Positions 19,777 to 62,397 of a stretch of DNA of 64,000 nucleotides are shown here, piece by piece. Each line of letters opens with the position of its first letter. The first letter of the stretch is position 1. The position numbers were made by a program, and so were the translations under genes. The stretch comes from Octopus bimaculoides. Taxonomy: Eukaryota. The stretch covers positions 95,451,530 through 95,515,529 of the forward strand of contig NC_068986.1 of assembly GCF_001194135.2 (NCBI RefSeq), in the 5' to 3' direction. The notes below the pieces were generated by a model. The model had not been told where the DNA came from. It saw only the letters and a list, made by a program, of their open reading frames with translations, and searched no databases.

Positions 19777-20271
19777 TTTGTGAAAATTCTTGAATCGCAG
19801 ATCAAGTATACTAGAAATACAAAGAGGACTCAACACGAATCAGAACTAACCCTCGTGTGATTCGTTACGTGTTACAGAATTAACGTTTTAGCAGAGAATC
19901 TCTGCTTTCGTTAATTCAATAGTTCCTCGGAAACTGAACGCATGCACACACACATACATACACAGACCTGCATAGATATATACTTATATATATACATGTG
20001 TGCGCGCGTGTGTCCGAGCGTGCGTGCGTGTATGTGCGTACGTGCGTGTGTGCGTGTGCGTGTGCGCGTGCGTGCGTGTGGGCGTGTGGGCGTGCGCGTG
20101 CGNNNNNNNNNNGTGCGTGTGGGCGTGTGGGCGTGCGCGTGCGTGCGTGTGGGCGTGCGCGTGCGTGAGTGCGCGCGTGCGTGCGTGGGTGTGCGTGTGT
20201 GTATGCATGTATATATGTATGCATGTGTGTATGTATGTGTATGTATGGGTATATGTGTATGTATGTATGTA

Positions 20272-20591
20272 TACTCTTTTTTACTCTTTTACTTGTTTCA
20301 GTCATTTAGTCGAGCAAATCGACCCCAGGACTTATTCTTTGTAAGCCTAGTACTTATTCTATCGATTCTCTTTTACCGAACCGCTAAGTTACGGGGACGT
20401 AAACACACCACCATCGGTTGTCAAGCGATGTTGGGGCACAAACACAGACACACACAAACACACACACACACACACACACACANNNNNNNNNNNNNNNNNN
20501 NNNNNNNNNNNNNNNNNNNNNNNNNNNNNNNNNNNNNNNNNNNNNNNNNNNNNNNNNNNNNNNNNNNNNNNNNNNNNNNNNNNNNNNNNNN

Positions 20592-20627
<36 letters not shown>

Positions 20628-20703
20628 ACATATACATATATATGACGGGCTTCTTTCAGTTTCCGTCTACCAAATCCACTCACAAGGCTTTGGTCGGCCT
20701 GAG
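20272..20703 (-). mobile_element. SINE family B with internal (CA)n/gap/(TA)n
   Basis: Tail half 20272-20460, microsatellite and gap, head half gacgggcttctttcagtttccgtctaccaaatccactcacaaggc. Confidence 0.85.
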
Positions 20704-20967
20704 GTAGATATACATATGCATAAACACATATAGACAGGTAGATAGACAGACAGAAACAATAGCAAACAGAAAACAGGTTTGGAAGTTATGTAATTCAATG
20801 CTTTTACAGGACAAACTCGTACTTCCCCAAATTGCCTTCATAAATACATAACACTTGTAGAAACATATAATCTTGCAATACATTTCATCAGTATTCCGCA
20901 ATACTTACAATATGCATGGAAGGCTCACTGAAGAATGTATGTGCGTGTGTGTGCGTGTGTCTGTGTT

Positions 20968-29341: not shown

Positions 29342-29657
29342 TAGGAATGGCTGTGTGGTAAGTAGCTTGCTTACCAACCACATGGTTCCGGGTTCATTCC
29401 TACTGCGTGGCATCTTGGGCAAGTGTCTTCTACTATAACCTCGGGCCGATCAAAGCCTTGTGAGTGGATTTGGTAGACGGAAACTGAAAGAAGCCCGTAG
29501 TATATATGTATATATGTGTGTGTGAGTCTGTGCTTGTCCCCCCAAGATCGCTTAACAACCGATGCTGGTGTGTTTACGTCCCCGTAACTTAGCGGTTCGG
29601 CAAGAGAGACCGATAGAATAAGTACTAGGCATCCAAAGAATAAGTCCTGGGGTCGAT
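29342..29657 (+). mobile_element. SINE family B, cut by a gap
   Basis: tggctgtgtggtaagtagcttgcttaccaaccacatggttccgggttc head, internal tatatatgtgtg, tail to gaataagtcctggggtcgat. Confidence 0.9.
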
Positions 29658-30214
29658 NNNNNNNNNNNNNNNNNNNNNNNNNNNNNNNNNNNNNNNNNNN
29701 NNNNNNNNNNNNNNNNNNNNNNNNNNNNNNNNNNNNNNNNNNNNNNNNNNNNNNNNNNNNNNNNNNNNNNNNNNNNNNNNNNNNNNNNNNNNNNNNNNNN
29801 NNNNNNNNNNNNNNNNNNNNATATATATATATATATATATATATATACATGCATCTACTTATACATATGTTTATACACACACACACGCATATATATATAT
29901 ATATATCATATGTAAGTATGTAAATGTATAAAAATATGGAAGAGTTACTATAAAATAGTCAAGAGTGAAACACGGTCGTGCTTTCAGTATTACATTAATG
30001 CATTGCGTGTGTATCTGAGTATCTGCGTGCGTGTGTATGTATACATGTGAGCGAGCGAGTGCGCGTATGTGAGAAAATACAGAGATTAAATATTATAACT
30101 CTAGAATAGAATTAAACAGACAAGCTGTCTCAAATAGACAGATAGAAAGACAGTCAGACAGATAGACAGACAGATAGAAAAATAGATCACTACATATGTG
30201 AGTGTGTGCGTGTT

Positions 30215-35959: not shown

Positions 35960-36007
35960 GAAGTTTGAAAACGCCACTATATAAGATAAATTTTAATTTT
36001 CTGAGAG

Positions 36008-36054
36008 ATTTTACATGTTTCGGTTCCTTTTGAAAAAACGAACCTTATCAAAAA
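36008..36054 (-). ncRNA. Type I hammerhead, U3-A8 core variant (3' pLTR, sense to the PLE ORF)
   Basis: attt-TTGATAA-ggttc(gttttttcaaaag)gaacc-GAAA-catg-TA-aaat; palindromic ACAUGU stem III. Confidence 0.65.
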
Positions 36055-37973
36055 TATATATTTTTAAAAGTTAAGTGTAATAAAAGAAAAGTTGGCTGTA
36101 ATAGCAGCAGTAGCAGAGACCGTTGTTTGCAGTAGTAGTAGTGATCGTGGTGGTAGTGGTGGTTGGAGTTGTAGAATTCTTTTTTTCTTTTTGGATAACC
36201 AATATATGGTTTTAATGTTCCTGACCCAGGGTGTTTAAACGTGGTCCGAATTTTCTAATGAAATGAAGTTCTTTGTTATAACGTTGGGTGAAGATTGCGT
36301 TGTTATTGAATTGGTAAAATGGGAAAGTTGTCAATTTTGGATGGTCGCTGACAGGTATTTTCCTGTATTCAGGATTCCTAATTTGGGATTTATGTACTGC
36401 CATCCTTTTTCGTAGGCTGTTTTTTGTATGACCAATATATTGCCTATTGCACCCTGCGCATGTCATCACGTAAATTAAGTTTTCCGATGCACAGGTGAAG
36501 TTTGTTCTGATGGTAAAATGATGGCCTTGTTCTAATGTATATTCCGAACATTCTAATAAGATGTCACAGATCCTGCAGTTGGGCTTTCCACACTTTTTAA
36601 CTGCTGGTTTTGTGGTTGTTATTGGGTGCAGTTTAGCCTGGGTTAAAATCTTCTTTAAGGATTTTGGTTGCCGTTTACTTTTCATGATGGTGTACGTTTG
36701 GAGGATTCGGTTCATCTTTGGGTCTCCCTTGAGTAGGGCTGTGCTTTGGAGAGTGGTGTTGAAGGCCTCATTGTTAAGTGGGTTGTGTGTAGAGATGTAG
36801 GGTATGGTTTATAATTTTTCTTCCTTTTTTGGTTTTGGTTGTCTCAGGTCTTCTATATTTGATTTAAATGCTCGTTGGATTGCATTGTCTATTAGGAGTT
36901 GTGAATAATTCCTATTTATGAGTGTAGTTATGAGTTCCTGGAGACGTGTGTGTCGGGTGTTTGTGTCTGATACTAGGTGCAAATCCTTTTGGCTAAACAG
37001 AAGGAGATATTCTTTCTTGTGTGTCTTGGGCGGCATGAGTCAAATGGTAGGTACTGCTTTGAGTCTGTCGGTTTATGATAGATATCCGTCTCTATTTTGT
37101 TGCCGACTTTCTTAATGAGGATATCTAGAAATGGTAGTTTTTCCTGGTAATGTTCTATCGTGAACTGGATGTTTTCATTAATTCCAATTAGTATTATTTT
37201 AAATTCCTCAAGTTTTTCTATACTTTCATCCCAGACGATGAAGCTGTCGTCGAGATATCTTTTCCAGTTGTTCTGGATATAGGTGGGAAAAGAGTTTCCA
37301 TATTTCTCGAGTGTTTTCTGGTAAAGTATTATTTCGAGGTAGCCCATTACTAGGTTAGCAAAAGAAGGCGCAGTACGTGTACCCATGGTTGTTCCCGATC
37401 TTTGTCTGCAGTAGTCATTATTAAATATAAATTAATTGTTTTCTAAGATAAATCTCAGTCCTTCTTTTATGAGTTCTTTATTTACGCGAGTTGGAAGTTC
37501 AAAGGAGTAGTTGTTTAGCCAGAAAGTGATCGCTTCTATTCCTAGGGTGTGGGGTATGTTTAACTAAAGGTTAACTACGTCGAAGGATACTAGCAGGGCT
37601 TTCTCATTGACTGTTTTTAAGGAGGTGGTTAAGCATGTCTAGATCGTCTCTTATGTAGCTTTTGACATGCTTAAGGAAAGGTTTCAGAAGTATGTCTAAG
37701 AAGTTGCTGAGGCAGTGAGTTTCGCATGCTAGACCTGCTATTACCGGTCTAAGTTTAAGATCATTCGGTGAGGGGATTTTGATGATTATGTCAGTAGTAC
37801 TGTTTTACGGTTTGTTGACCGCTCTTCGGAGAAAACGTACCCATTTTCCACCCCACGCACAAGACAGCCATTATGTTCCCACACATAAAACGCTACCACT
37901 TGGACTCTGTTGAAACTAGTAAGAAATAATTATGAACTTTTCTTTTATTACACTTAACTTTTAAAAATATATT

Positions 37974-38019
37974 TTTTTGATAAGGTTCGTTTTTTCAAGA
38001 AGAACCGAAACATGTAAAA
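37974..38019 (+). ncRNA. Type I hammerhead, U3-A8 core variant (inverted 5' pLTR)
   Basis: ttt-TTGATAA(37977-83)-ggttc(gttttttcaagaa)gaacc-GAAA(38007-10)-catg-TA-aaa. Confidence 0.65.
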
Positions 38020-38067
38020 TCTCACAGAAAATTAAAATTNNNNNNNNNNTATATATATATATATATA

Positions 38068-40624: not shown

Positions 40625-40779
40625 ACTGTGTCACGCTGAATATCCCCGAGAACTACGTTAAGGGTACACGTGTTTGTGGAGTGCTCAGCCACTTGCACGT
40701 TAATTTCACGAGCAGGCTGTTCCGTTGATCGGATCGACTGGAACCCTCGACGTCGTAAGCGACGGAGTGTTAACAACAA
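40625..40779 (+). mobile_element. SINE family C, 3' part with (AAC)n tail
   Basis: gtcacgctgaatatccccgagaactacgttaaggg...cgacggagtgttaacaacaac. Confidence 0.9.
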
Positions 40780-41219
40780 CATGTATGTATGTATGTATGT
40801 ATGTATGTATGTATGTATGTATGTATGTATGTATACATGTATGTATGCATGTAGGTAGGTAGGTAGGTAGGTAGGTAGGTAGGTATTATGTATGCATATG
40901 CTATACTTATCTCGTAAAAAAGCTCAGTTCTCTCAGTTGAAAACAGGTACCACAGGTTAAGAACAACTTGTAATGGCACCGTCAAATGCACAAGCTGTTC
41001 GTTAGTTGTTAGCTGTAGTGCTGGGTTCGTTCCCATTCCACTGCACTCCTGGAGAAACCACTCTAATTCTCTTTTCTAGTTATAATGTTTAACCCATTAT
41101 TTTGGTCCCCAATATTTTATCTTTTAACCGGGAAAGAATGCATCATTCATGGCTTTTCGCAGAATATCAAAACTTGTAGATAGAAGATAGAGAAGGTATC
41201 CTCAAACCAAAGAGCTGAC

Positions 41220-41585
41220 CCTACTGCTGGCCCTAGTGCTGGTCCAAGTGCTGGCCCTAGTGCTGGCCCTAGTGCTGGCCCTAGTTCTGGCCCTAGTGCT
41301 GGCCCTAGTGCTGGCCCTAGCGCTGGCTCTAGTGCTGGCCCTAGCGCTGGCTCTAGCGCTGGCCCTAGTGATGGCCCTAGTGATGGCCCTAGTGATGGCC
41401 CTAGTGATGGCCCTAGTGCTGGTCCTAGTGCTGGCTCTAGTGCTGGCTCTAGTGCTGGCCCTAGTGCTGGCCCTAGTGCTGGTCCTAGTGCTGGCTCTAG
41501 TGATGGCTCTAGTGCTGGCCCTAGCGCTGGCTCTAGTGCTGGCTCTAGCGCTGGCCCTAGTTCTGGCCCTAGTGGGGGCCCTAGT
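41220..41585. repeat. 12-bp minisatellite (CCTAGTGCTGGC)n, ~30 units
   Basis: Exact 12-nt period with no indels; reads (PSAG)n on plus and (LGPA)n on minus. Confidence 0.95.
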
Positions 41586-41724
41586 CCTCTCTGTGAATGG
41601 ACTGGGCTTAAATGCAACCAAGTTGCCAAGTGACGATGTTAAACTGAGCGGTATATTGTTTTTACCCAAATAGACTATGGCATGATCTGAACTTAGAAAA
41701 TAAAAAGCCGGAATAAGAACGATA

Positions 41725-41900
41725 GGGTATTCGGTCTGATGTGCTCACAGTTCCACTAATCCACCGCCTTGTATTCGTACTTTTTTATTGTCCCTGAAAT
41801 AATTAAAGGCAAAATTCGACCTCGGCGTTATTTGAACTCAGAATGTAGCGAGATAGAAAAAATACTGTAAGACATTCTATCCGACGTTCTAATGACTACC
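41725..41900 (-). mobile_element. Degenerate SINE family A
   Basis: aaaggcaaaattcgacctcggcgttatttgaactcagaatgtag. Confidence 0.7.
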
Positions 41901-42279
41901 AGTTCACCAACTGTTGATCGTAAATTCTAATTTGTAATTATGTAGTGTATAGTATGTCGTTTCAGGTTATAGTTATCGTGGTACAATGATGTTTTCAACA
42001 ACAGTTAGATGCCATGCCACGGTCGTTTTGTAAGATAGTAGAGTAGAGAGGTGTTAAATGATTTAAGAGTATTCGCAGATAAAAATCAGTCTGAGACACT
42101 AGCAATGAGTTGTAGAGTTAAGCTGATGCCTTGTTTAACACCACCACCTGGACCTTGGATCTCTTAGGAGGACTTCAATCTTGTAAGCGTTAAGACTAGA
42201 TTTCTGGTTTGAAGGTAACTTCTTCTCACCAGTCCCGGAGACCTATAAAGGGTCATGGGAGTATTCCACCATCGCCCCA

Positions 42280-43330
42280 AGATCATCGCCACAAAACCAC
42301 CACCACCACCACCCCCAAGACCATCTATACAATACCACCACCATCACCACTAGATCATTACCACAACACCACTAGCATCGCCTCAAAACTACTTCTACAA
42401 CGACATCATCATCATCATCATAACGCCGCCACCCGTCATAGCTCCCAACAAAATCTCCACCCGTCACTATGCCACCACCAACACCACCACAACCACAAAA
42501 CTTTGCAGCTCGGTTAAACCGTCACGATAGATTAAACATATTAACACGCTCAGAGCAGACGGCGTTGCTGTTTCACTTCAGAGTGCAACTGCTAGTTTAC
42601 TTCATCGATAAATCGATTGGCGCAGAATGCAATAGCTATAGTGTTATTGGTTGCCTTGGTGATGCAGTCTTCAGGTGATTTCTTTTTCTCTCTTCCTTCT
42701 CTTTTATTTTTTTTTCTTCAAATCACCCATCCATCTCTTGTATTTCCCTTACACATCACACTTCGTTCCTTCGTTTCCTCCCCAAAATACCAGTATTGAT
42801 CTCACACGGTCGTCTGCAGTTTATCACTTTCATTATCACAAACAACAACCATCAACACCACCACTAGCAGCAACAACAACAACAACAACATCAACACCAC
42901 CACCAACAACAACCAACATAGTTTCAAGACTGCCATCAACACCAACCATCAAGACCTCCATCAGCAACAACAACACCATCAACGCCGCTGCCATCAGCAC
43001 CTCAACAACTCTACTATTACCACCAACCCCAACCATCAAGATCGCCATAAGCAACGACAATACCAACATCACCACATGATACTATCCTTCCTCGATACCA
43101 CCATCATACAATACCATCGTCACCAACACCACTTACATAGCCCCACCTTCGACATCGCCACCACAAAACAATACAATCACCATTACATAACACCAAAGCC
43201 ACCGCCACCACCATCACCATGTAACAGCAACACCACGAAAAACCACCACCATCACACAATACCATCACTACCACAAAACACCACCAACACCAACACCGCA
43301 CGACCACGCAAATACGACAAACAGTAAGAA
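42280..43330. repeat. Degenerate (ACC/AAC/ATC)n low-complexity tracts
   Basis: They explain the T/P/H-rich ORFs. Confidence 0.8.
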
Positions 43331-43904
43331 CCAACAAGAGATTCCTCTATGCGGTCTTGCCAAAAATGGAATCCAAATTCCCCTCTAATCAGACACATTC
43401 AGCTTGAAAAAGGAAGAAACATAGATAAAGTAGTCCTAGATACACTATGCTGGAACAACTTTGATTACAGTTCTGCAGTATTAGCAACACTAATAATACC
43501 ACCATCAGAAATAGCAGCCAAATTTTCTTCATTACATTCTGCCGTCATAAAAGAGGAATGATTTATTTGTTTATATGGTCCTAAGAATTAAAGGCAGGAT
43601 GGTCATTGATGGAACGCCTTTGATCAAAGTTCTGTTCAATCAGGACTAACTTTTGCTAAACAACAACAACTATAAACATGACTTGTTTCTTTAGGGATTG
43701 CTCCCCCTACTGTATCTTTGTCCCTTTTTGTTATTGACGTATTGATGGGCGGGAAAAGATGGATGAAGGTCTTCACAACAAAAAGAAAACAGAGACGATG
43801 ACAATCGCAAAGAAAATAAGCGATTTACAACATATGAATTAATTGGAACAACAGGGAAACAAGTCGATAGTTTTAAATACTTGGGAACCATCAGTATAAC
43901 AGAT

Positions 43905-44277
43905 AGCTGTTGTTGTTGACACTCCGTCGCTTACGACGTCGAGGGTTCCAGTTGATCCGATCAACGGAACAGCCTACTCGTGAAATTAACGTACAAGTGG
44001 CTGAGCACTCCACAGACACGTGTACCCTTAACGTAGTTCTTGGGGGATATTCAGCATGACACAGTGTGACAAGGCTGACCCTTTGAATTACAGGCACAAC
44101 AGAAACAGGAAGTAAGAGTGAGAGAAAGTTGTGGTGAAAGAGTACAGCAAGGTTCGCCACCATCCCCTGTCGGAGCCTCGTGGAGCTTTAGGTGTTTTCG
44201 CTCAATAAACACTCACAACGCCCGGTCTGGGAATCGAAACCGCGAGTCCGCTGCCCTAACCACTGGGCCATTGCTCC
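43905..44277 (-). mobile_element. SINE family C
   Basis: Near-full-length reverse complement of 45776-46163. Confidence 0.9.
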
Positions 44278-45194
44278 ACCACTTCTTCCGATCTACTGCC
44301 ATAGTAATGCGAAATATAGAATCGTGACAGCTTTTGGATGTGGTGGCGATGGGGATGGATGGGGGTGTATCCTGCACATGTGTTTTTGTACGTGTATGTA
44401 TTAGTATATGTGCGTTTCAGCGTGTATGTATAAGCATGTTTGTATGTTACAAGACTGCGAGTATGCACATCTGTGAATATGTATGTATCATCACTATCTG
44501 TTTAGTTGCGCATGTATGTGTGTGTGTTTGTGTGCGTTTATACGTGTTCACTCTCTTTTCAGTGTGAGTGAGAGGATTGTATGATATTGAATCATAAGAC
44601 CCTTAAGATTGGTGATACTGATGATGATGATGAGGATGGTAGTGGTGGTGGTGGTGGTGGCGGCGGCGGTGGGGGCGGCGGCGGTGGTGATGATATGTTT
44701 ATGAGTATGCTTGAGCGAACATGTGTACACATATGTGCATATTAATGCATGTGTGTGTGTGTGCGTGTATGTTTGTATGTGTGTGTGTGTGTGTGTGTGC
44801 GCGTGTGTGTATGTTTATGTGCGTGTCTCTCTCTCTCTCTCTCTGTATGTTTCTGTGTCTGCGAGTGCTGTGAATTTGTCTGAAATATAGGGTAAAACAG
44901 AATATTTGAAGTGAACATATGATAGCCTTGAGATATAATCTAGCATTTTATTTGAAGTATGACAGAAAATAAATCTGGAAACACACCAAATCGATTTAGA
45001 AACTGTATGATATATTATCTTGTTCTGCACCGCATTATACTAAACGATATCACACGATATTACATCGTTCTAAACAACCTTCCGTTTGTAATGGTCTGCA
45101 CTACACAACATAGTATTGTTATATACTATGTTACGCTAGCCTACATTACATCACGTGTAGTTGTTCTATAATACCCTACGAGGCCTATTGCACT

Positions 45195-45470
45195 CACGAA
45201 CGAAAGATCGTGGGTTTGAATCATGGACCGGGTGACGCGTTGTATTTTTGAGCAAAATCTTCATTTCACGTTGCTCCAATCACGATCGTAAGATTGTAGT
45301 TTCGATTCCTGGACCGGGCGGTGCGCTGTATTCTGGAACAAAACATCTCATTTCGCGTTGCTCCAGTCACTATCACCAGATAGTGGTTTCAACTGCTGGG
45401 CGGTGCGTTTCGTTTTTAAGCAAAAACCCTTAATTTCACGTTGCTCCAGTTCACTCAGCTGTAAATGAGT
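45195..45470 (+). repeat. Three tandem ~85-bp partial SINE heads
   Basis: B-box-like g(g)tttcgattcc/gggtttgaatc plus ttgctcca recurring at 45271, 45358 and 45441. Confidence 0.7.
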
Positions 45471-45775
45471 AACCCTGCAACGGAGCGGTGTCCTTTTCAG
45501 GGAAAATGCTGTGATTTCTGTAACTTACACCTGGGTAAATGGCTCTGTGTGTCCCAGGACTCGAAACAATAATAATGAGTGGTGGTGGTGGTGGTTTTTT
45601 GTTGTTGTTGTTGTTGTTGTTTTACATTACCCTGCACCACACAACATTGCATTGCGCTGCATCATGTTGACCGAGTAATAACTACACAGTATTATGCTAC
45701 ACTTTCGTACACTACAATATACTCCACTATATTTCAGTACACTGCACTATTTTGCACCACACTGCATCACTCTGT

Positions 45776-46163
45776 GGAGGCGCAATGGCCCAGTGGTTAG
45801 AGCAGCGGACTCGCGGTCATAGGATCGCGGTTTCGATTCCCAGACCGGGCGTTGTGAGTGTTTATTGAGCGAAAACACCTAAAGCTCCACGAGGCTCCGG
45901 CAGGGGATGGTGGCGAACCCTGCTGTACTCTTTCACCATAACTTTCTCTCACTCTTACTTCCTGTTTCTGTTGTGCCTGTAATTCAAAGGGTCAGCCTTG
46001 TCACACTGTGTCACGCTGAATATCCCTGAGAACTACGTTAAGGCTACACGTGTCTGTGGAGTTCTCAGCCACTTGCACGTTAATTTCACGAGCAGGCTGT
46101 TCCGTTGATCGGATCAACTGGAACCCTCGACGTCGTAAGCGACGGAGTACCAACAACAACAAC
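45776..46163 (+). mobile_element. Full-length tRNA-derived SINE family C with 11-bp TSD
   Basis: A-box tggcccagtgg, B-box ggtttcgattccc, (AAC)n tail; TSD tgcatcactct at 45763-73 and 46166-76. Confidence 0.92.
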
Positions 46164-48796: not shown

Positions 48797-49023
48797 AACA
48801 ACAAATAAGATGAGAACAAATATCCGTCGAATGTAAATAATGTAAATAATGTATTTGTAAACATGACAAACATTTTTTGCCAAACATTTTACCAATGCAC
48901 CAAAGTGTTCCCTTAATAACAACCTATTTCAGTTGATGATTTATTATTGCACCGTATATAATTTTAATTAGTCTAATGTATTTTCCCATCAGCATCAACT
49001 GATTTTTTTTCTACATGTTCGTT

Positions 49024-49173
49024 AGGCGTAGACGTGGCTATGTGGTAACCAACCACATGGTTCGGGGTTCAGTCCCACTGCGTGGCACCTTATGCAAGTG
49101 TCTTCTAATATAGCCTCGGGCCGATCAAAGCCTTGTGAGTGGATTTGGTAGACGCAAACTGAAAGAAGCCCGT

Positions 49174-49218
<45 letters not shown>
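49024..49218 (+). mobile_element. SINE family B head running into (TG)n and a 949-N gap
   Basis: ccaaccacatggttcggggttcagtcccactgcgtggcacc..gaaagaagcccg. Confidence 0.85.
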
Positions 49219-53250: not shown

Positions 53251-53404
53251 GTACATGCATACAAATATATATATATATACTAGATGATAAAGCGAATCGT
53301 TTACACCTGGTAGCTTACTGGTAAAGCATGGTCACTTTCACAGTGATCGTTATGTATATGGTAAATGAAAGAAGGAAGATGGAATATACGAGAGTTTATT
53401 ATTA

Positions 53405-53512
53405 ATCACGACAATCGTTTCGATACATCTAGCATCGATCCCTCACGGGTGGGACACTCAACAGCTGGTTCAGGAGCATCCAGAGGTGCAGATGTCCGTC
53501 TCGTCAGGTGAT
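53405..53512 (-). ncRNA. Type I hammerhead with intact core and a 79-nt branched stem II domain
   Basis: atcac-CTGACGA-[ga..acatct ... agatgt.tc]-GAAA-c(gatt)g-TC-gtgat; predicted cleavage between 53410 and 53409. Confidence 0.8.
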
Positions 53513-54755
53513 AAATAGACACAACTCGTTAAAATAACAGTCCTGCAATGTATTTTCTCATTTCGTAGAAAGAAAAGCAGGCAAACGAAGGAAATATCTT
53601 CATTTACATAGAAGATCAAAAATAAAATCACAAATGCAAAAAAGAAACGAACACGCAATACAGCAAGATAAGTATTAAAAATAACCGTTAACAAATATAG
53701 ATGTATAAACGCCCTTGCGCAAGCTGCATGGCGCGTGTACACTCGCTGGTACAAGCATCCGCGTAAGTGTAAGCATACGCTCACATGTGATTTGGTGCAC
53801 TTACGATCACAAGGCGAGTTAAATAGCTACTTGGTGTTTATAAGAATGGGGAAGTTAAAACTAAACTTAATTCATCCATACCTTAAAGTAAATTATGTTA
53901 ACAGTTACTCAAATTCATTCCCACTGCATTGTACGAAAGTACATTTATATGCGTGTAGGCATGTTGAGAGTCTTTCAGAAATTCTATTAATGACCTTTTC
54001 ATTAGTCAACAGAATAGACAGGGTTTCCTCGGAGCAGGGACGGCATCTCCTGGAAATGATATTGAATGGTTTCATGTGCTTTACTATGTTACGCTGTACT
54101 TAATTTTATCCTCCTTCAGTCGCCATAAAAAATCGGCCAAAGATGTTGAATGTCTCTTATTGATTGTCTTAAAGCTGGCGACATGGTTACGATAGCGATT
54201 CTTAAATGAACCCGCCGTCTGCCCAATGCAAATATACGGCCCTCCCCTTGCGTGTACGGTACATTTATATACAAGATTTGTACTCATGCAGAGGTTTATC
54301 AACGGGCATTTTGATTTATCTCTGCATGAGCATTTATCATATTTATTTGTATATAAGGCAATTTCAACTCCTTTTACCGACTTTGTTACCGTGTTAGCTG
54401 TATAATAAGCATTTCTACTATTACAATTTGGCCGTAATTGGTGTTTTTCATTGCGGTTTACATCTCTTTCGTTAGTATTTAGATGCGTATGTTCGCTAGA
54501 TCCAATAGGTGGGTTATTGAACCTTTGTCGCATTTTACTATTGTTTATTCGATGCATAAGCTACTCTAAATTAGCAGAGTTGGCGTAGAATACCTTCACG
54601 GTGTGTCGATTAAAATAGCATGATATCGATTAGATTTAGGAAAACATTTGTCCAAAGCGGCAAAAAGTTTTCCAATGATCATGGTTGAAACATGCGAACC
54701 AAAAATCGGGTTGAACCAGAGAGCATCCTGATCCCTATATCTGTTGTGTCTATTT

Positions 54756-54861
54756 ATCACCCGATAAGACACATATGCACCGCCTGGTGCTCCTGAACTA
54801 GTTGTTGAGTATCCCACACGTAAGGAATCGATGCTAGATGTGTCGAAACAACTATCGTGAT
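54756..54861 (+). ncRNA. Degenerate inverted copy of the branched-stem-II hammerhead
   Basis: atcac-CCGATAA-gacacatat...agatgtgtc-GAAA-caacta-TC-gtgat; core and stem III mutated, probably inactive. Confidence 0.7.
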
Positions 54862-54961
54862 TAGTAATAAATTCTCGTATATTCCATCTTCCGTCTTTCA
54901 TTTACCATATATATATATACACTGTGTGTGTCAGAGAGAGAGAGACAGACAGAGACAGAGG

Positions 54962-55040
<79 letters not shown>

Positions 55041-55664
55041 ATTAATATTTTGCCCCCAAAATATATTTTTAGTTTTGTTTCCGCTAAAGATGTATCAAAG
55101 CAAAGAATGTTATAAGCGGAATCGTCTTAGAAACAATTTATCTGGAATCCCAATGTAGAAATGATTTTCGTTCAACATGAAAGGAAGATAAAAGAAAGGC
55201 AGAAAAGAAGAGTGAATTAGAACTGAGGCAATATGTATTTAAGTATGAAACCATTAGCTATTCTATTTAACTATAAGAAGAGATATCGTCTTAATCAGAT
55301 ACACTGAATATATTTCAGTCATATCTGTTCTAGTGTAATACATTTACCATGCATTGTTTCTGAAATGTATTTTTAGAGAAAAGCAGACGATAAATTAAAA
55401 TAGCGTTCGATATAAAAAAAAATGATTCAAAGCGTTGTGTAGGCGGGTAGGATAATAAGATGAAAAAATCAGTTCGGTTGAAATAATATATTCAAGATGA
55501 AGTAATTACGGATATTAAATAGAACGAAAATGGACGAATATAGATAGTTGGGTGTACGGGAATGGAGACAATGCAGAATAGAATGGTATATTTACTTAAT
55601 TAGATATAATTATTCTTTTGGCCTTGCACAATGTCTATCTTATTCGTTAAAGAAATTGAACTTA

Positions 55665-55706
<42 letters not shown>

Positions 55707-56504
55707 TTGAGAGAGAGAAAGAAAGATAGAGAGAGGGAAAGAGAGAGAAAGCGTACATGGGTATAAGGGAGGTGGAGTTACTTCAACTACAAGAAAAGAG
55801 ACGAATGACAAAAAATGCTTCCATTGTTATTTGAGTTCAAAACTATAGGAAGCACCGAACTAAATACTCTAAAATATCAAGCACGAGTCACTAGCTTTCA
55901 ATGTCTCTATTAGTATATTCACCTGATCAAATGAAGACAAGCTTTTCCGATCAAGACAATAAATTTTGATTACCAAATAAAAAGACATAAGATGTAAAGC
56001 AAAAAATAATCCTATAGTGAAACCACCGAATTACCAATATTATTTATTTCAAAATTTATTTTTGCATGGTCGTTTCCAGTCGCTTTCTCGTGATACCATA
56101 GGAAGATTTGAATTTTAGTCTAGTAATTCGCCCATGGTAAGAAATATATCAGCTTGGTAGAAGACTTTTTAAGTTAGATGATCTTAACGTTGTGAATAGA
56201 AATTTACGTAGGCACACACATACACTTACACACAGACACACTCACATGCACTCACGCACGCGCGCCAATTAACAAACACAGAAAGAGAAAGAAAGAGTTC
56301 TGTAACATCACAGCAAAGCAGAGTCTGATGAATGGAACGGGTGAACTCTGATCCGCGGTTATTTATTTCAATGTAGTGCTTTCTCAAAACAAGGTCCTGC
56401 ATCACAAGACAGAAATATCAACAAAATATCAAACGTAAAACAATAATATTGTGACAAAATCTAAGAGAATATCACACATACAGTTCAAGACTGGTGTATT
56501 AGCT

Positions 56505-56700
56505 CAATCGTTAGAATGACGGGCAAAATTGCTTTAGGGGTGTTTAATGTCATACTTTTACATTCTGAGTTCAAATCCGCCTGAGGTCAAATTTTACCTT
56601 TCATCTTCCCAGTATCGATAAACTAGTGCGTCAGTCAAGCACCGAGGTCTATTTAATCAATAATAGTCTCTTCTCTTTGCCTCTGTCACAAATGTGCGAC
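56505..56700 (+). mobile_element. Degenerate SINE family A
   Basis: ttctgagttcaaatccgcctgaggtcaaattttacctttcatc. Confidence 0.65.
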
Positions 56701-57745
56701 CTTGGACCTTTCTCATAAATCGATATATTACTAATAAAAAAATATCGCCAAAGCGGAAACGATTTCGATACACGTTTTTATTTCATTATCTGTTTCTTTT
56801 TCTCTTGATCAAATGATCTCTCTTCTTTCATCCTCCTCTTCAGTTACCCTCTCCTCCTTCTTCAATGACCTTCCTCACCCACCCTCCTTCTTTCTCATCA
56901 CCTCCCCTTTCGCTGCCTTCTTCATCCACTTTCTTCACTCTCATTTCTCTGTTTCTTTCATCTTCATTCATCCAACTTCTTTCAGTAGGTTCAGTACGGC
57001 CGAAGGATTAAGAAATTTGTTTCGCAACCAAAACGTTCCGCTTTCGATCCCATTGCGTGACATCTTGACCAAATATCATCTTCTACCACTGCCGGTCGAC
57101 CTCTACCCTGCGAACGAAACTAATGGAGACGGAGACTGTATAAAAGTTCATCGGGTGGATTGTACCTGTAATTCGAAAGGTGCAACCTTGTGGCACACCG
57201 TGTGCCACGAAGATTCTATCTGAGAATCACGTTAAGGGTGTAGGTGTCCAAAAGATCGTCAGCCATTTACTCGTTAACTCAGGAACAACTTATTCAATTC
57301 ATTGAACAACTGATTTCACCCATTTGAACGACATTTTTTTTTCTCTGTTACCCATAGATACCTGTGGATAAGATGCGCTTTTAAATGTTTAAATATAACA
57401 AAAAATTGCCATGCGTCTAAAGCGACTAAATTATGTATGGGATACCGAATGTGTGAGTGCATAATGAAGCATTATTAAATTTGTTTNNNNNNNNNNNNNN
57501 NNNNNNNNNNNNNNNNNNNNNNNNNCACAAAAAGTAGGGCTTTGTCTATATAAGGATGCATCTTATAATATCTACCGCCTTCATCCCTCTTTCAACCTTG
57601 CCATCATCCTTGTTTTCCCTTCTTCTTCTTCTTCTTCTTCTTCTAATTCTTTTTCTTCTCCTACTCTTCTTCCACCCCTTCCTTGGACAACACCATAACC
57701 CATTCTCTACTGCAATCACTTCAGTTATCATCTATATATATATAA

Positions 57746-57777
<32 letters not shown>

Positions 57778-57821
57778 TCCTTAAGTAACGAGAAGATGGA
57801 TTTGGCATTAATCTTTATTTT

Positions 57822-57916
57822 GTACAACGGTCGTTTCGACCCTTCCTGTCCCTTATGGGTGGGACTCTTTTCAACATGTGTTGCATCAACTTTGCAGTCT
57901 GGGTCTCATCGGGTAC
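57822..57916 (-). ncRNA. Third branched-stem-II hammerhead with a divergent sequence
   Basis: gtac-CCGATGA-gaccc[...tgca/tgca..caac/gttg..gtccc(acccataa)gggac...]gggtc-GAAA-c(gacc)g-TT-gtac. Confidence 0.75.
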
Positions 57917-58046
57917 CTCTATACATAAAGGCATGTGTCTCACAAAAGGTCCTGAGTTTTGGCTGCCATGTTGTTATATGACCGTCTGGTTAGGGAATGA
58001 AGCATCACTACAATATTCTATTACTATTATCTTTATTCGTGGAAGC

Positions 58047-58320
58047 ACATGGCCTAACTGATTAGAGCAGCGAACTCGCGGTCGAGTGATCGCAGGTTCG
58101 AATCTCAGACCGAGCGATGCTGTGCTTATGAGCGAAACATCTAAGCTCTACGCAGCTCCGGCAGAAGGTAATGGCGAACTTCTGCTAACTCTTTCACCAC
58201 AACTTTCTCTCAATCTGTCCTCCTGCATCTAGCAGCTCACTTGAAACGGGCCGGCGTCCCGTTCAGGTGGAGAACCTATACGCCAATGAAACCGGGAAAC
58301 CGGCCCTTATGAGCGAAAGA
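58047..58320 (+). mobile_element. SINE family C-related head with a different tail
   Basis: tggcctaactgattagagcagcgaactcgcggtc..ggttcgaatctcagacc..tctttcaccacaactttctc. Confidence 0.7.
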
Positions 58321-61746: not shown

Positions 61747-62044
61747 GCGTGCGTGTGTGTGTGTGTGTGTGTGTGTGTCTGTGTCTGTGTCTGTGTCTGT
61801 ATGTGCGCGTGCGCGCATGTATGTATATATAAGTAGTTTGTAGCATGCTTGAACCATTGCGGTATGTGTAGATTAGATGTTTGAAAAATCGTATGAGCAA
61901 TGCAGAAGGGTTATGTAAAATATGTAGGGTGATGTCAGTGAAAGAAAACAACCTTTCATAATTCATTTTTTTAATGATCCTATAATATTTCGGGAAAAGT
62001 TCCCCTTTTAAACTAGAAAAGAGTAATCAAAGATTCAGAAGAAA

Positions 62045-62397
62045 TGAGTTGTGTGATAAAAGGTTAGCTTTCTAACCACATGGTTCCGGCTCATCCCTAT
62101 TGTGTGGCGCTTTGGAAAAGTGCCTTCTACTATAGTCTTGGGCTGACCAAAGCCTTGTGAATGGATTTGGTAGGTATAAACTGAATAAAGTTCGTCGTGT
62201 TTGTGGGGTGTTTGTGCCCACCACCACTTGACAACTGGTATTGGTTTATTTACGTTCCCATAACTTTGCGTTTCAGCAAAAGATATCAATAGAATAAGTA
62301 CCAGATTTAAATAAAATACGAACTGGGGTCGATTCATACGACTAAAATTCCAGCATGGCCGCAGTCTAATGACTGAAAGAATTAAAAGATAAAAGAT
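62045..62397 (+). mobile_element. SINE family B, older full-length copy
   Basis: ctaaccacatggttccgg head through cagcatggccgcagtctaatgactgaaagaattaaaagataaaaga tail. Confidence 0.85.

What the first reader, a model, noticed from the sequence alone, without database searches (positions are those of the whole stretch)
53400..57916. Hammerhead ribozyme form with a three-hairpin domain inserted in stem II, at two divergent loci with covariation
Seen: 53405-53512 (minus) has a canonical type I core (5-bp stem I, CUGACGA, GAAA, C-G stem III, GUC), but stem II spans 79 nt instead of a short hairpin. A divergent locus at 57822-57916 has the same architecture with different, still paired stems. Stem I is atcac/gtgat versus gtac/gtac; stem II is gacacatct/agatgtgtc (consensus of the two pLTR copies) versus gaccc/gggtc. 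Inner hairpin a is gcacc/ggtgc versus tgca/tgca, hairpin b is aac/gtt versus caac/gttg, and hairpin c is shared: GUCCC-ACCC(G/A)U(G/A)A-GGGA. Known: PLE pLTRs usually carry minimal hammerheads with a short stem II. Inference: this is a conserved four-way-junction module (tertiary stabiliser, protein or RT recognition site, or cleavage switch) that may define an undescribed ribozyme subclass of this PLE lineage.
Basis: partly seen in the sequence, partly recalled or inferred. Interest (0 to 1): 0.85.

Follow-up and report, generated by a model that had tools for sequence, protein, structure and literature searches.

The report
Retrotransposon hammerhead with an oversized stem II
Three decayed copies of the 3' end of a Penelope-like retrotransposon carry a hammerhead ribozyme motif whose second stem is 68-79 nt instead of the usual short hairpin, but the claimed conserved three-hairpin fold inside that stem is not supported by the few copies available.

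Summary
The sequences are as described. Copy A (53405-53512, minus) has stem I, CUGACGA, a 79-nt stem II, GAAA, a 1-bp stem III and GUC. Copy B (54756-54861, plus) is an inverted 83-86% copy. Copy C (57822-57916, minus) is a homologue about 57% identical.

B reads CCGAUAA with a broken stem III, and C reads CCGAUGA.

The motif sits 3' of a broken GIY-YIG endonuclease remnant with Hydra-clade PLE hallmarks: a CxCX5C linker and (TA)n targets. Only two further homologues could be recovered, both from Logan contigs. The family consensus core is CUGAUGA.

Stems I and II show three compensatory double changes between lineages. Models were trained on family 1 and scored on C. Sequence alone gave 15.8 bits, the hammerhead stems gave 33.9, and adding the three inner hairpins gave 34.1.

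A rod-like alternative pairs equally well (83.2% versus 81.5%). Consensus folding of the insert does not beat column shuffles with all five copies.

Verdict: a real relic PLE hammerhead with an expanded helix II, which is a new variant of a known kind. The four-way-junction module is unproven, and only hairpin c is clearly conserved, at sequence level. The assembly gap is irrelevant.

The parts
53405..53512 (-). Hammerhead copy A, the only window copy with a canonical core. Stem I is 53508-53512 paired with 53405-53409. CUGACGA is at 53501-53507. The expanded stem II spans 53422-53500, with hairpin c at 53438-53455. GAAA is at 53418-53421. Stem III is C[GAUU]G at 53412-53417. The predicted cleavage after GUC falls between 53410 and 53409.
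   Evidence: Sequence read. Rfam Hammerhead_1 gives 18.1 bits over the full model. Model R1 gives 116 bits.
53284..53404 (-). The 3' tail of element A downstream of the cleavage site, running into a (TA)n microsatellite near 53265. The last ~80 nt (53284-53350) are shared with L002 but absent from copies B and C.
   Evidence: blastn of A against L002 extends to 53284. Homology to B and C ends at about 53351-53362.
53513..54742 (-). Body of a 5'-truncated, dead Penelope-like element. It holds a GIY-YIG endonuclease remnant (ORF 54084-54557) with the linker CSCRDKSKC (CxCX5C), YICIGQT and a downstream CxxC. Several in-frame stops follow the ORF.
   Evidence: Translations. The element body is 81% identical to L001 and 72% to L002 at DNA level. 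P0001 is 66% identical at protein level, E = 2.7e-48. The motifs match the Hydra-clade description in PMC8557442 section 11.
54743..54915 (+). Copy B, an inverted 5'-truncated copy of the element's 3' end, abutting (TA)n/(GA)n repeats. Its hammerhead is at 54756-54861, with core CCGAUAA at 54761-54767 and a broken stem III (C-A).
   Evidence: Inverted repeat I4. blastn gives 86% over 175 nt. Sequence. R1 gives 121 bits.
57782..57917 (-). Copy C, a diverged short copy (hammerhead plus about 40 nt of tail) ending at a (TAA)n/(TA)n microsatellite. Its hammerhead is at 57822-57916, with core CCGAUGA at 57906-57912, stem II at 57838-57905 and hairpin c at 57848-57865. The predicted cleavage after GUU falls between 57826 and 57825.
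   Evidence: Sequence. Local alignment to A scores 55 against a shuffle maximum of 36. Rfam Hammerhead_1 gives 23.5 bits. R1 gives 34.1 bits, E = 3e-7.
57487..57525 (.). Assembly gap (39 N). It is not part of the feature and lies about 257 nt beyond the end of copy C.

Best explanation
These are three dead genomic copies of the 3' terminal (pLTR) region of a Hydra-clade Penelope-like retrotransposon. The region encodes a type I hammerhead ribozyme whose helix II was expanded from the usual 6-10 bp hairpin to a 68-79 nt domain.

Shown:
- The motif lies about 570 nt 3' of a broken GIY-YIG endonuclease remnant.
- It occurs in the usual PLE layout: a 5'-truncated copy plus an inverted short copy, both inserted in (TA)n.
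- The family consensus has the full CUGAUGA...GAAA core.
- Stems I and II keep pairing through compensatory substitutions between the two lineages.
- The expansion is homologous in both lineages, so it predates their split.

Inferred:
- In the active progenitor the ribozyme worked like other PLE hammerheads. Helix III is one C-G pair closed by a near-palindromic loop (CGAUUG pairs with itself through two G-U wobbles). Cleavage after GUC would therefore need two units pairing through helix III, probably helped by the element's protein.
- Helix II points away from the catalytic core, so a large insert beyond the G10.1-C11.1 pair is tolerated.

The internal fold of the insert is unresolved. A four-way junction and a rod with one terminal hairpin fit equally well. 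Only hairpin c (GUCCC-ACCCRURA-GGGAY) is clearly conserved, at sequence level. It is the best candidate for a protein or tertiary contact site.

The copies in this window are relics. B and C have lost U4, B has also lost G8 and stem III, and A has a mismatch and a bulge at the base of helix II.
For: - Core and helices were read directly.
- Chance expectation is 0.035-0.075 per 64 kb.
- Hydra-clade endonuclease hallmarks and (TA)n flanks are present.
- Homologues L001 and L002 give the consensus ATCAC CTGATGA GACACATCT...AGATGTGTC GAAA.
- C is homologous to A over the hammerhead plus tail.
- Compensatory pairs on the model-fitted alignment: stem I U-A to G-C and C-G to U-A; stem II A-U to C-G.
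- Models trained on family 1 score C at 15.8 bits (sequence only), 33.9 (hammerhead stems) and 34.1 (plus inner hairpins).
- Hairpin c is the most conserved part of the insert, 13/18 against 5/14 for hairpin a.
- An ordinary short-helix-II PLE hammerhead in the same layout sits at 36007-36056(-) and 37972-38019(+) in this window.
- PLE hammerheads are known to be weak, dimer-dependent or protein-dependent (PMC4209133, PMC6765202, PMC11167929).
Against: - Only two of five copies (A and L002) have the canonical core. B and C share C at position 4. An ancestral CCGA that decayed to CTGA by CpG deamination cannot be excluded. CpG o/e in the window is 0.80.
- Both loci fall below the Rfam gathering score. 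The ordinary PLE hammerhead in the window is not detected by Rfam at all, so this test is weak.
- Single-sequence folding does not favour the hammerhead fold. Z-scores are -1.2 to -1.6. Hammerhead-compatible folds of A and of an idealised consensus lie about 12-23 kcal/mol above the MFE.
- No cleavage or expression data exist.
- Only five decayed sequences were available.
Confidence: 0.7

Rival explanations
1. One reading: the insert is a conserved, specifically folded three-hairpin, four-way-junction module (tertiary stabiliser, RT/protein recognition site or switch) that defines a ribozyme subclass.
For: - With the three window copies alone, RNAalifold recovers hairpins a and c, and the energy beats column shuffles (z = -3.7).
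- The MFE fold of C is stem II plus three hairpins.
- The stem and loop of hairpin c are conserved between lineages.
- The PAc PLE hammerhead cleaved only when its protein was added (PMC11167929), so a protein-binding appendage is plausible.
Against: - The inner hairpins add 0.2 bit when locus C is scored.
- A rod-like alternative pairs in 83.2% of cells on an alignment that was fitted to the three-hairpin model.
- The signal vanishes with five copies (z = +0.83) and within family 1 (z = +0.06).
- RNAalifold on MAFFT alignments finds no such structure.
- Hairpins a and b share an invariant 3-bp core.
- The family consensus of hairpin a contains a C-A mismatch.
Confidence: 0.2
2. The insert is a tolerated expansion of helix II, either neutral filler or a long imperfect rod, with no specific function. 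The conservation of hairpin c only reflects limited divergence.
For: - RNAalifold on the five-copy alignment predicts an extended stem II (a further GCA/UGC) plus an 7-bp helix capped by hairpin b. This fold pairs at 83.2%.
- PLE hammerheads already tend to have larger helix II (PMC4209133).
- The insert differs by indels between lineages: the 7-nt linker is missing in C and the stem II length differs.
- Identity is low in the hairpin a and b segments (36-48%).
Against: - Hairpin c, including its 8-nt loop, is conserved at 13/18 in a pair that is otherwise 52-59% identical.
- The rod is not predicted for C.
- The covariation term of the rod consensus is unfavourable (+2.26).
Confidence: 0.35
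3. The motif was never an active ribozyme. It would be a hammerhead-like sequence with ancestral C4, or a fossil inherited already inactive, whose canonical look in A results from CpG-to-TpG decay.
For: - B and C both read CCGA at core positions 3-6.
- C-to-T change at a CpG is the commonest substitution, and CpG o/e is 0.80.
- Hammerhead folds are thermodynamically disfavoured in the models.
- Some PLE clades thrive without hammerheads (PMC8557442).
Against: - Three of five copies, including the two most distant family members, read CTGA. None shows the CCAA expected from decay of the other strand.
- A itself gained a CpG by a T-to-C change at N7, so such transitions do occur here.
- All other core positions, G10.1-C11.1, A15.1-U16.1 and H17 are in place.
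- Stems I and II carry compensatory changes.
- The position in the element matches that of PLE hammerheads.
Confidence: 0.1

Closest known systems
Minimal type I hammerheads of Penelope-like element pLTRs (Cervera & de la Pena 2014, PMC4209133; Lunse et al. 2017)
   Same: Located in the terminal repeat 3' of the RT/EN ORF. Open helix I of 4-5 bp. Helix III reduced to one pair with a (near-)palindromic loop, implying dimeric cleavage. No loop-loop tertiary contacts. Found in 5'-truncated and inverted copies. An ordinary example lies in this same window at 36007-36056(-) and 37972-38019(+).
   Different: Helix II spans 68-79 nt with internal branches or loops, instead of a 6-10 bp hairpin. There is no bulged nucleotide at the 5' end of helix II. 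General descriptors and Rfam's gathering threshold would miss it.
Hydra clade of C-terminal-EN Penelope-like elements (Craig et al. 2021, PMC8557442)
   Same: The endonuclease linker is CxCX5C (CSCRDKSKC). A CxxC lies near the C-terminus. Insertion is into (TA)n. A terminal tail is present at only some copies. Inverted 5'-truncated partner copies occur. Molluscs are among the reported hosts.
   Different: That paper reports 'canonical' hammerheads readily found with a general descriptor in Hydra elements. This family's hammerhead would not fit such a descriptor. The RT part needed for a proper clade assignment is missing here.
'HHR_half_core' cases in Naiad PLEs (Craig et al. 2021, methods)
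   Same: CUGANGA and GAAA halves are separated by much more than a normal helix II (35-50 nt there).
   Different: Those were reported as unexplained core halves, without stems fitting a hammerhead. Here stems I, II and III flank the halves, and the spacing is 68-79 nt.
Hammerheads with large natural or engineered appendages (own knowledge: the discontinuous Clec2 hammerhead with a long insert in a stem; aptazymes carrying aptamers on stem II)
   Same: They show that a helix of the hammerhead can carry a long insert without destroying the core.
   Different: They have a different helix or an artificial origin, and are unrelated to PLEs.

Membership tests
Hammerhead ribozyme, type I (Rfam RF00163, clan CL00010) | Conserved core C3-U4-G5-A6-N7-G8-A9 ... 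G12-A13-A14, A15.1-U16.1, H17 | tested here: met
   Met in copy A (CUGACGA...GAAA...GUC), in L002 and in the four-copy consensus. Not met in B (CCGAUAA), C (CCGAUGA) or L001 (CUGGUGC).
Hammerhead ribozyme, type I (Rfam RF00163, clan CL00010) | Three helices around the core, helix I open-ended, pairing maintained by covariation | tested here: met
   Stem I has 2 pairs and stem II has 1 pair with changes on both sides between the A family and C. The model with hammerhead stems scores C at 33.9 bits against 15.8 for sequence only. Stem III is a single pair and is broken in B and L002.
Hammerhead ribozyme, type I (Rfam RF00163, clan CL00010) | Score at or above the Rfam gathering threshold (34 bits) | tested here: not met
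   The scores are 23.5 bits (C) and 18.1 bits (A). The ordinary PLE hammerhead in the window and L002 get no hit at E <= 10, so the threshold is insensitive to PLE variants.
Hammerhead ribozyme, type I (Rfam RF00163, clan CL00010) | Site-specific self-cleavage 3' of H17 | not testable with these tools
   This needs in vitro transcription or mapping of RNA ends.
PLE pLTR minimal hammerhead (Cervera & de la Pena 2014) | Lies in the terminal repeat of a Penelope-like element next to its RT/EN ORF | tested here: met
   A GIY-YIG remnant lies at 54084-54557(-), upstream of A. B is an inverted partner. All copies have (TA)n flanks.
PLE pLTR minimal hammerhead (Cervera & de la Pena 2014) | Short helix I (4-5 bp); helix III absent or 1-2 bp with a small palindromic loop | tested here: met
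   Helix I is 5 bp in A and 4 bp in C. Helix III is C[GAUU]G, where CGAUUG is self-complementary with two G-U pairs, and C[GACC]G.
PLE pLTR minimal hammerhead (Cervera & de la Pena 2014) | Helix II is a simple hairpin of about 6-8 bp with a bulged base at its 5' end | tested here: not met
   Helix II spans 79 nt in A, 77 nt in B and L002, and 68 nt in C. No 5' bulged base is present.
Hydra-clade Penelope-like element (Craig et al. 2021) | C-terminal GIY-YIG EN with a CxCX5C linker, flanking CxxC, and no CCHH motif | tested here: inconclusive
   CSCRDKSKC and C(R/L)(L/F)C are present in the window, L001 and L002. Absence of CCHH was judged by eye only, on a broken ORF.
Hydra-clade Penelope-like element (Craig et al. 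2021) | RT with DKT and RWK motifs; phylogenetic placement by RT | not testable with these tools
   The RT region is missing from the window copy and from L001-L004. Only two protein homologues were found.
Hydra-clade Penelope-like element (Craig et al. 2021) | Insertion into (TA)n microsatellites | tested here: met
   (TA)n or (TAA)n abuts A (about 53265), B (54909 onward), C (57730-57780) and the start of L001.

The most novel reading that the evidence does not exclude
In the active members of this mollusc Hydra-clade PLE lineage, the 60-80 nt helix II domain, with the invariant hairpin c loop ACCCRURA, is a dedicated module. It recruits the element's RT/EN protein or replaces the missing loop-loop tertiary contact. 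Ribozyme cleavage would then depend on RNP assembly. That would make it a previously undescribed, protein-gated hammerhead subclass.
Probability: 0.15. Interest if true: 0.55.

Novelty: new variant of a known kind. Interest (0 to 1): 0.3.

Why it matters
Hammerheads are a universal but functionally unexplained feature of Penelope-like elements. Published searches use descriptors that assume a short helix II, so forms like this one are missed or logged as 'half cores'. That can lead to wrong statements that a clade lacks ribozymes.

If the expanded helix II proved to be a protein-binding or folding module, it would give a handle on why PLE hammerheads are nearly inactive alone. As it stands, the window only holds decayed relics, and the finding is a modest annotation-level variant.

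Tried and rejected
- Rfam at gathering threshold gave nothing in the window. At E <= 10 it gave only sub-threshold Hammerhead_1 hits.
- More copies by the protein route: the endonuclease query gave only two Logan proteins. A spurious ORF over locus C gave none. A profile of the 3'-UTR ORFs gave only L001 again.
- Exact look-ups of three window ORFs in public assemblies found nothing on record. The source genome, the species and the sequence across the gap could therefore not be checked.
- The metagenome scan for the hairpin c 17-mer gave 110 stretches (111 matches examined). None had a hammerhead context, so they are chance hits.
- A search of the whole window with the family model and filters off found no further copies. 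The next hits, at 16.8-15.5 bits, are microsatellite noise and the ordinary hammerhead of the second PLE.
- Single-sequence MFE folding gave insignificant z-scores (-1.2 to -1.6). The hammerhead fold was recovered only for stem II of C.
- RNAalifold on MAFFT alignments gave no or trivial consensus structure.
- Pseudoknot, GNRA-receptor and telomere-repeat readings of the hairpin c loop were looked for by eye. None is shared by both lineages, so they were dropped.
- The SRR run numbers were not found in the literature.
- The supplement of Craig et al. with the Hydra hammerheads is not held, and Lunse et al. 2017 is not held. Prior description therefore cannot be fully excluded.


Full report
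**What is in the sequence**

On the minus strand, 53512->53405 reads AUCAC-CUGACGA-[79 nt]-GAAA-C-GAUU-G-UC-GUGAU. That is a 5-bp open helix I, a canonical hammerhead core, a helix II bounded by GAC.../...AUC, a one-pair helix III and a GUC cleavage triplet.

A second copy (B) is the inverted repeat I4. It is 86% identical over 175 nt, and its motif lies at 54756-54861 on the plus strand. Its core is CCGAUAA (U4C and G8A) and its helix III pair is C-A.

The third locus (C), 57916->57822 minus, reads GUAC-CCGAUGA-[68 nt]-GAAA-C-GACC-G-UU-GUAC. It has the same architecture but C at core position 4. However, 'canonical' applies to one copy of three.

**Is it more than chance?**

- A hammerhead descriptor (helix I >= 4 bp, helix II >= 3 bp, helix III >= 1 bp, U-H) hits 0.035 times per Markov-shuffled window with the strict core and 0.075 times with the relaxed core.
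- Rfam Hammerhead_1 aligns end to end to C (23.5 bits) and A (18.1 bits), below the gathering score of 34.
- That threshold is uninformative here. An ordinary PLE hammerhead elsewhere in the window, and the homologue in L002, get no Rfam hit at all at E <= 10.

**The gap**

The 39-N gap at 57487-57525 lies 296 nt from the 3' end of motif C. It is about 257 nt beyond the end of its homology to A (57782). It is separated from the element by a (TAA)n/(TA)n microsatellite and CT-rich DNA. Nothing in the feature crosses it, and no reading frame is involved. I could not test continuity, because none of three window ORFs is on record in other assemblies.

**Context**

Between B and A, on the minus strand, lies a broken ORF (54084-54557). 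It contains ...NKYDKCSCRDKSKCPLINLC...VYKCTV...YICIGQT..FKNRYRNH..., followed after in-frame stops by ...PCLFC..MKRSLI. This is a GIY-YIG endonuclease with a CxCX5C linker and a flanking CxxC.

These are the features that Craig et al. 2021 give for their Hydra clade of C-terminal-EN Penelope-like elements. That clade also inserts into (TA)n and occurs in molluscs (PMC8557442).

All copies here abut (TA)n-type repeats. The layout is a 5'-truncated copy with an inverted, shorter copy next to it, which is the standard PLE arrangement (PMC8557442).

A and L002 extend about 80 nt further 3' than B and C. This fits the PLE 'tail' and the internal-initiation behaviour described for PAc (PMC11167929).

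**Relatives**

The endonuclease query found only two proteins, both from Logan assemblies. Their contigs give two more copies of the region:
- L001 is 81% identical to A. Its core is CUGGUGC, and the contig ends inside the motif.
- L002 is 72% identical to A, with core CUGAUGA.

The four-copy consensus is ATCAC-CTGATGA-GACACATCT...AGATGTGTC-GAAA, which is a canonical core with a 9-bp base of helix II.

C is homologous to A over 53509-53362 / 57914-57782, with score 55 against shuffles of 26 +/- 3. The long helix II is therefore inherited and predates the split of the two lineages.

Further attempts to find copies failed. Two more protein searches and a metagenome scan gave nothing useful. The family model found no further copy in the window.

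**The structure tests**

The unambiguous compensatory changes are:
- helix I: U-A to G-C, and C-G to U-A;
- helix II: A-U to C-G, all in C;
- in addition, a G-C to A-U change at 10.1/11.1 in L001.

I built three models from family 1 only and scored C with each:

| Model | Content | Score on C |
|---|---|---|
| R3 | sequence only | 15.8 bits |
| R2 | helices I, II and III | 33.9 bits |
| R1 | the same plus hairpins a, b and c | 34.1 bits |

The hammerhead helices are therefore strongly supported by the diverged copy, and the inner hairpins are not. Further points:
- RNAalifold predicts no three-hairpin consensus from MAFFT alignments.
- On the structure-fitted alignment it prefers a rod: helix II extended by GCA/UGC, an 7-bp helix, and hairpin b as the tip.
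- The consensus folding energy of the insert against column shuffles is z = +0.83 with five copies and z = +0.06 within family 1. It is z = -3.7 only when the three window copies are used alone.
- Hairpins a and b share invariant 3-bp cores (GCA/UGC, AAC/GUU) with lineage-specific extensions, which is not covariation.
- Hairpin a in the family consensus has a C-A mismatch. Only B has GGUGC.
- Hairpin c, stem and loop, is the best conserved part of the insert: 13/18 identical, against 5/14 for hairpin a.
- Thermodynamic models do not favour the hammerhead fold in single sequences.

**Interpretation**

The best reading is a relic PLE hammerhead with an expanded helix II. In the progenitor it would have acted like other PLE hammerheads. 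It would be weak as a monomer because helix III is a single pair. It could dimerise through the near-palindromic CGAUUG, and it may have needed the element's protein (PMC4209133, PMC6765202, PMC11167929).

Helix II leaves the core through the conserved G10.1-C11.1 pair, so a long appendage is sterically harmless (general hammerhead knowledge). Whether the appendage does anything is open. Hairpin c is the only candidate functional piece.

**Caveats**

- B and C share C4, so an ancestral CCGA that decayed to CTGA at a CpG cannot be excluded. CpG o/e is 0.80.
- Three of five copies read CTGA, and none reads CCAA.
- Natural core variants listed by Perreault et al. do not include U4C (PMC3088659).

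**Comparison and novelty**

Published PLE hammerheads have helix II of 6-8 bp (PMC4209133). The same window holds such an ordinary one at 36007-36056(-), with an inverted copy at 37972-38019(+), belonging to a second PLE. Its helix II is about 27 nt and its core carries a U3-A8 pair.

I found no description of a PLE hammerhead with a 70-80 nt helix II. The nearest is the 'HHR_half_core' note, with a 35-50 nt spacing, in Craig et al. 2021. Two relevant sources were not readable.

This is a new variant of a known kind, resting on five decayed copies and no biochemistry. Interest is modest.

Noticed in passing
window 35960-38040, minus strand (ORFs 36212-36715 and 36973-37386): A second, different Penelope-like element. 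It has an RT fragment with YLDD and a GIY-YIG endonuclease with a CGKPNCRIC (CX4CX2C) linker. Its 3' end carries an ordinary minimal type I hammerhead at 36056->36007: helix I AUUUU/AAAAU, core UUGAUAA (the U3-A8 covarying variant), helix II GGUUC...GAACC, GAAA, palindromic CAUG, followed by (TA)n(TG)n. Rfam does not detect it at E <= 10.
   Followed up: partly
window 37940-38039, plus strand: An inverted, 5'-truncated copy of the 3' end of that second PLE, including its hammerhead (37972-38019). It abuts a 10-N gap and (TA)n. This is the same head-to-head layout as copies A and B.
   Followed up: partly
window 53284-53350 versus 54915 and 57782: Copies A and L002 carry about 80 nt more 3' sequence than copies B and C, which both stop about 45-55 nt after the hammerhead. 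Both short copies also begin within 0-18 nt of the hammerhead's 5' end. This suggests preferred start and stop points of reverse transcription around the ribozyme.
   Followed up: partly
window 40625-46161: A set of long, nearly perfect repeats: 44044-44245 / 45825-46026 (202 nt, 98% complementary), 40644-40786 / 43903-44045 (94% complementary), and direct copies 40625-40781 / 46005-46161 (95%). A diverged piece lies at 58143-58230, next to locus C. It is probably a foldback or MITE-like element.
   Followed up: no
window 41139-41666: A 12-nt tandem array of about 40 units, open in several frames (GPAL/EPAL-type repeats).
   Followed up: no
window 19942-20733, 29371-29886, 49022-49200, 62035-62337: A recurring short interspersed repeat, whose translation contains ...VSVYQIHSQGF(G/D)RPE.... 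It occurs at four or more places, often next to assembly gaps and microsatellites.
   Followed up: no
whole window: There are nineteen assembly gaps (10-948 N) and very dense microsatellites. The gaps tend to sit at (TA)n/(CA)n arrays, where PLEs of this kind insert, so PLE termini are likely under-assembled in this genome.
   Followed up: no
L001 (Logan SRR11869391) position 1172: The contig ends at ...GUGUUGAAAUA, about 7 nt before the predicted hammerhead cleavage site. It is not known whether the run is RNA or DNA, so this may be a coincidence.
   Followed up: no
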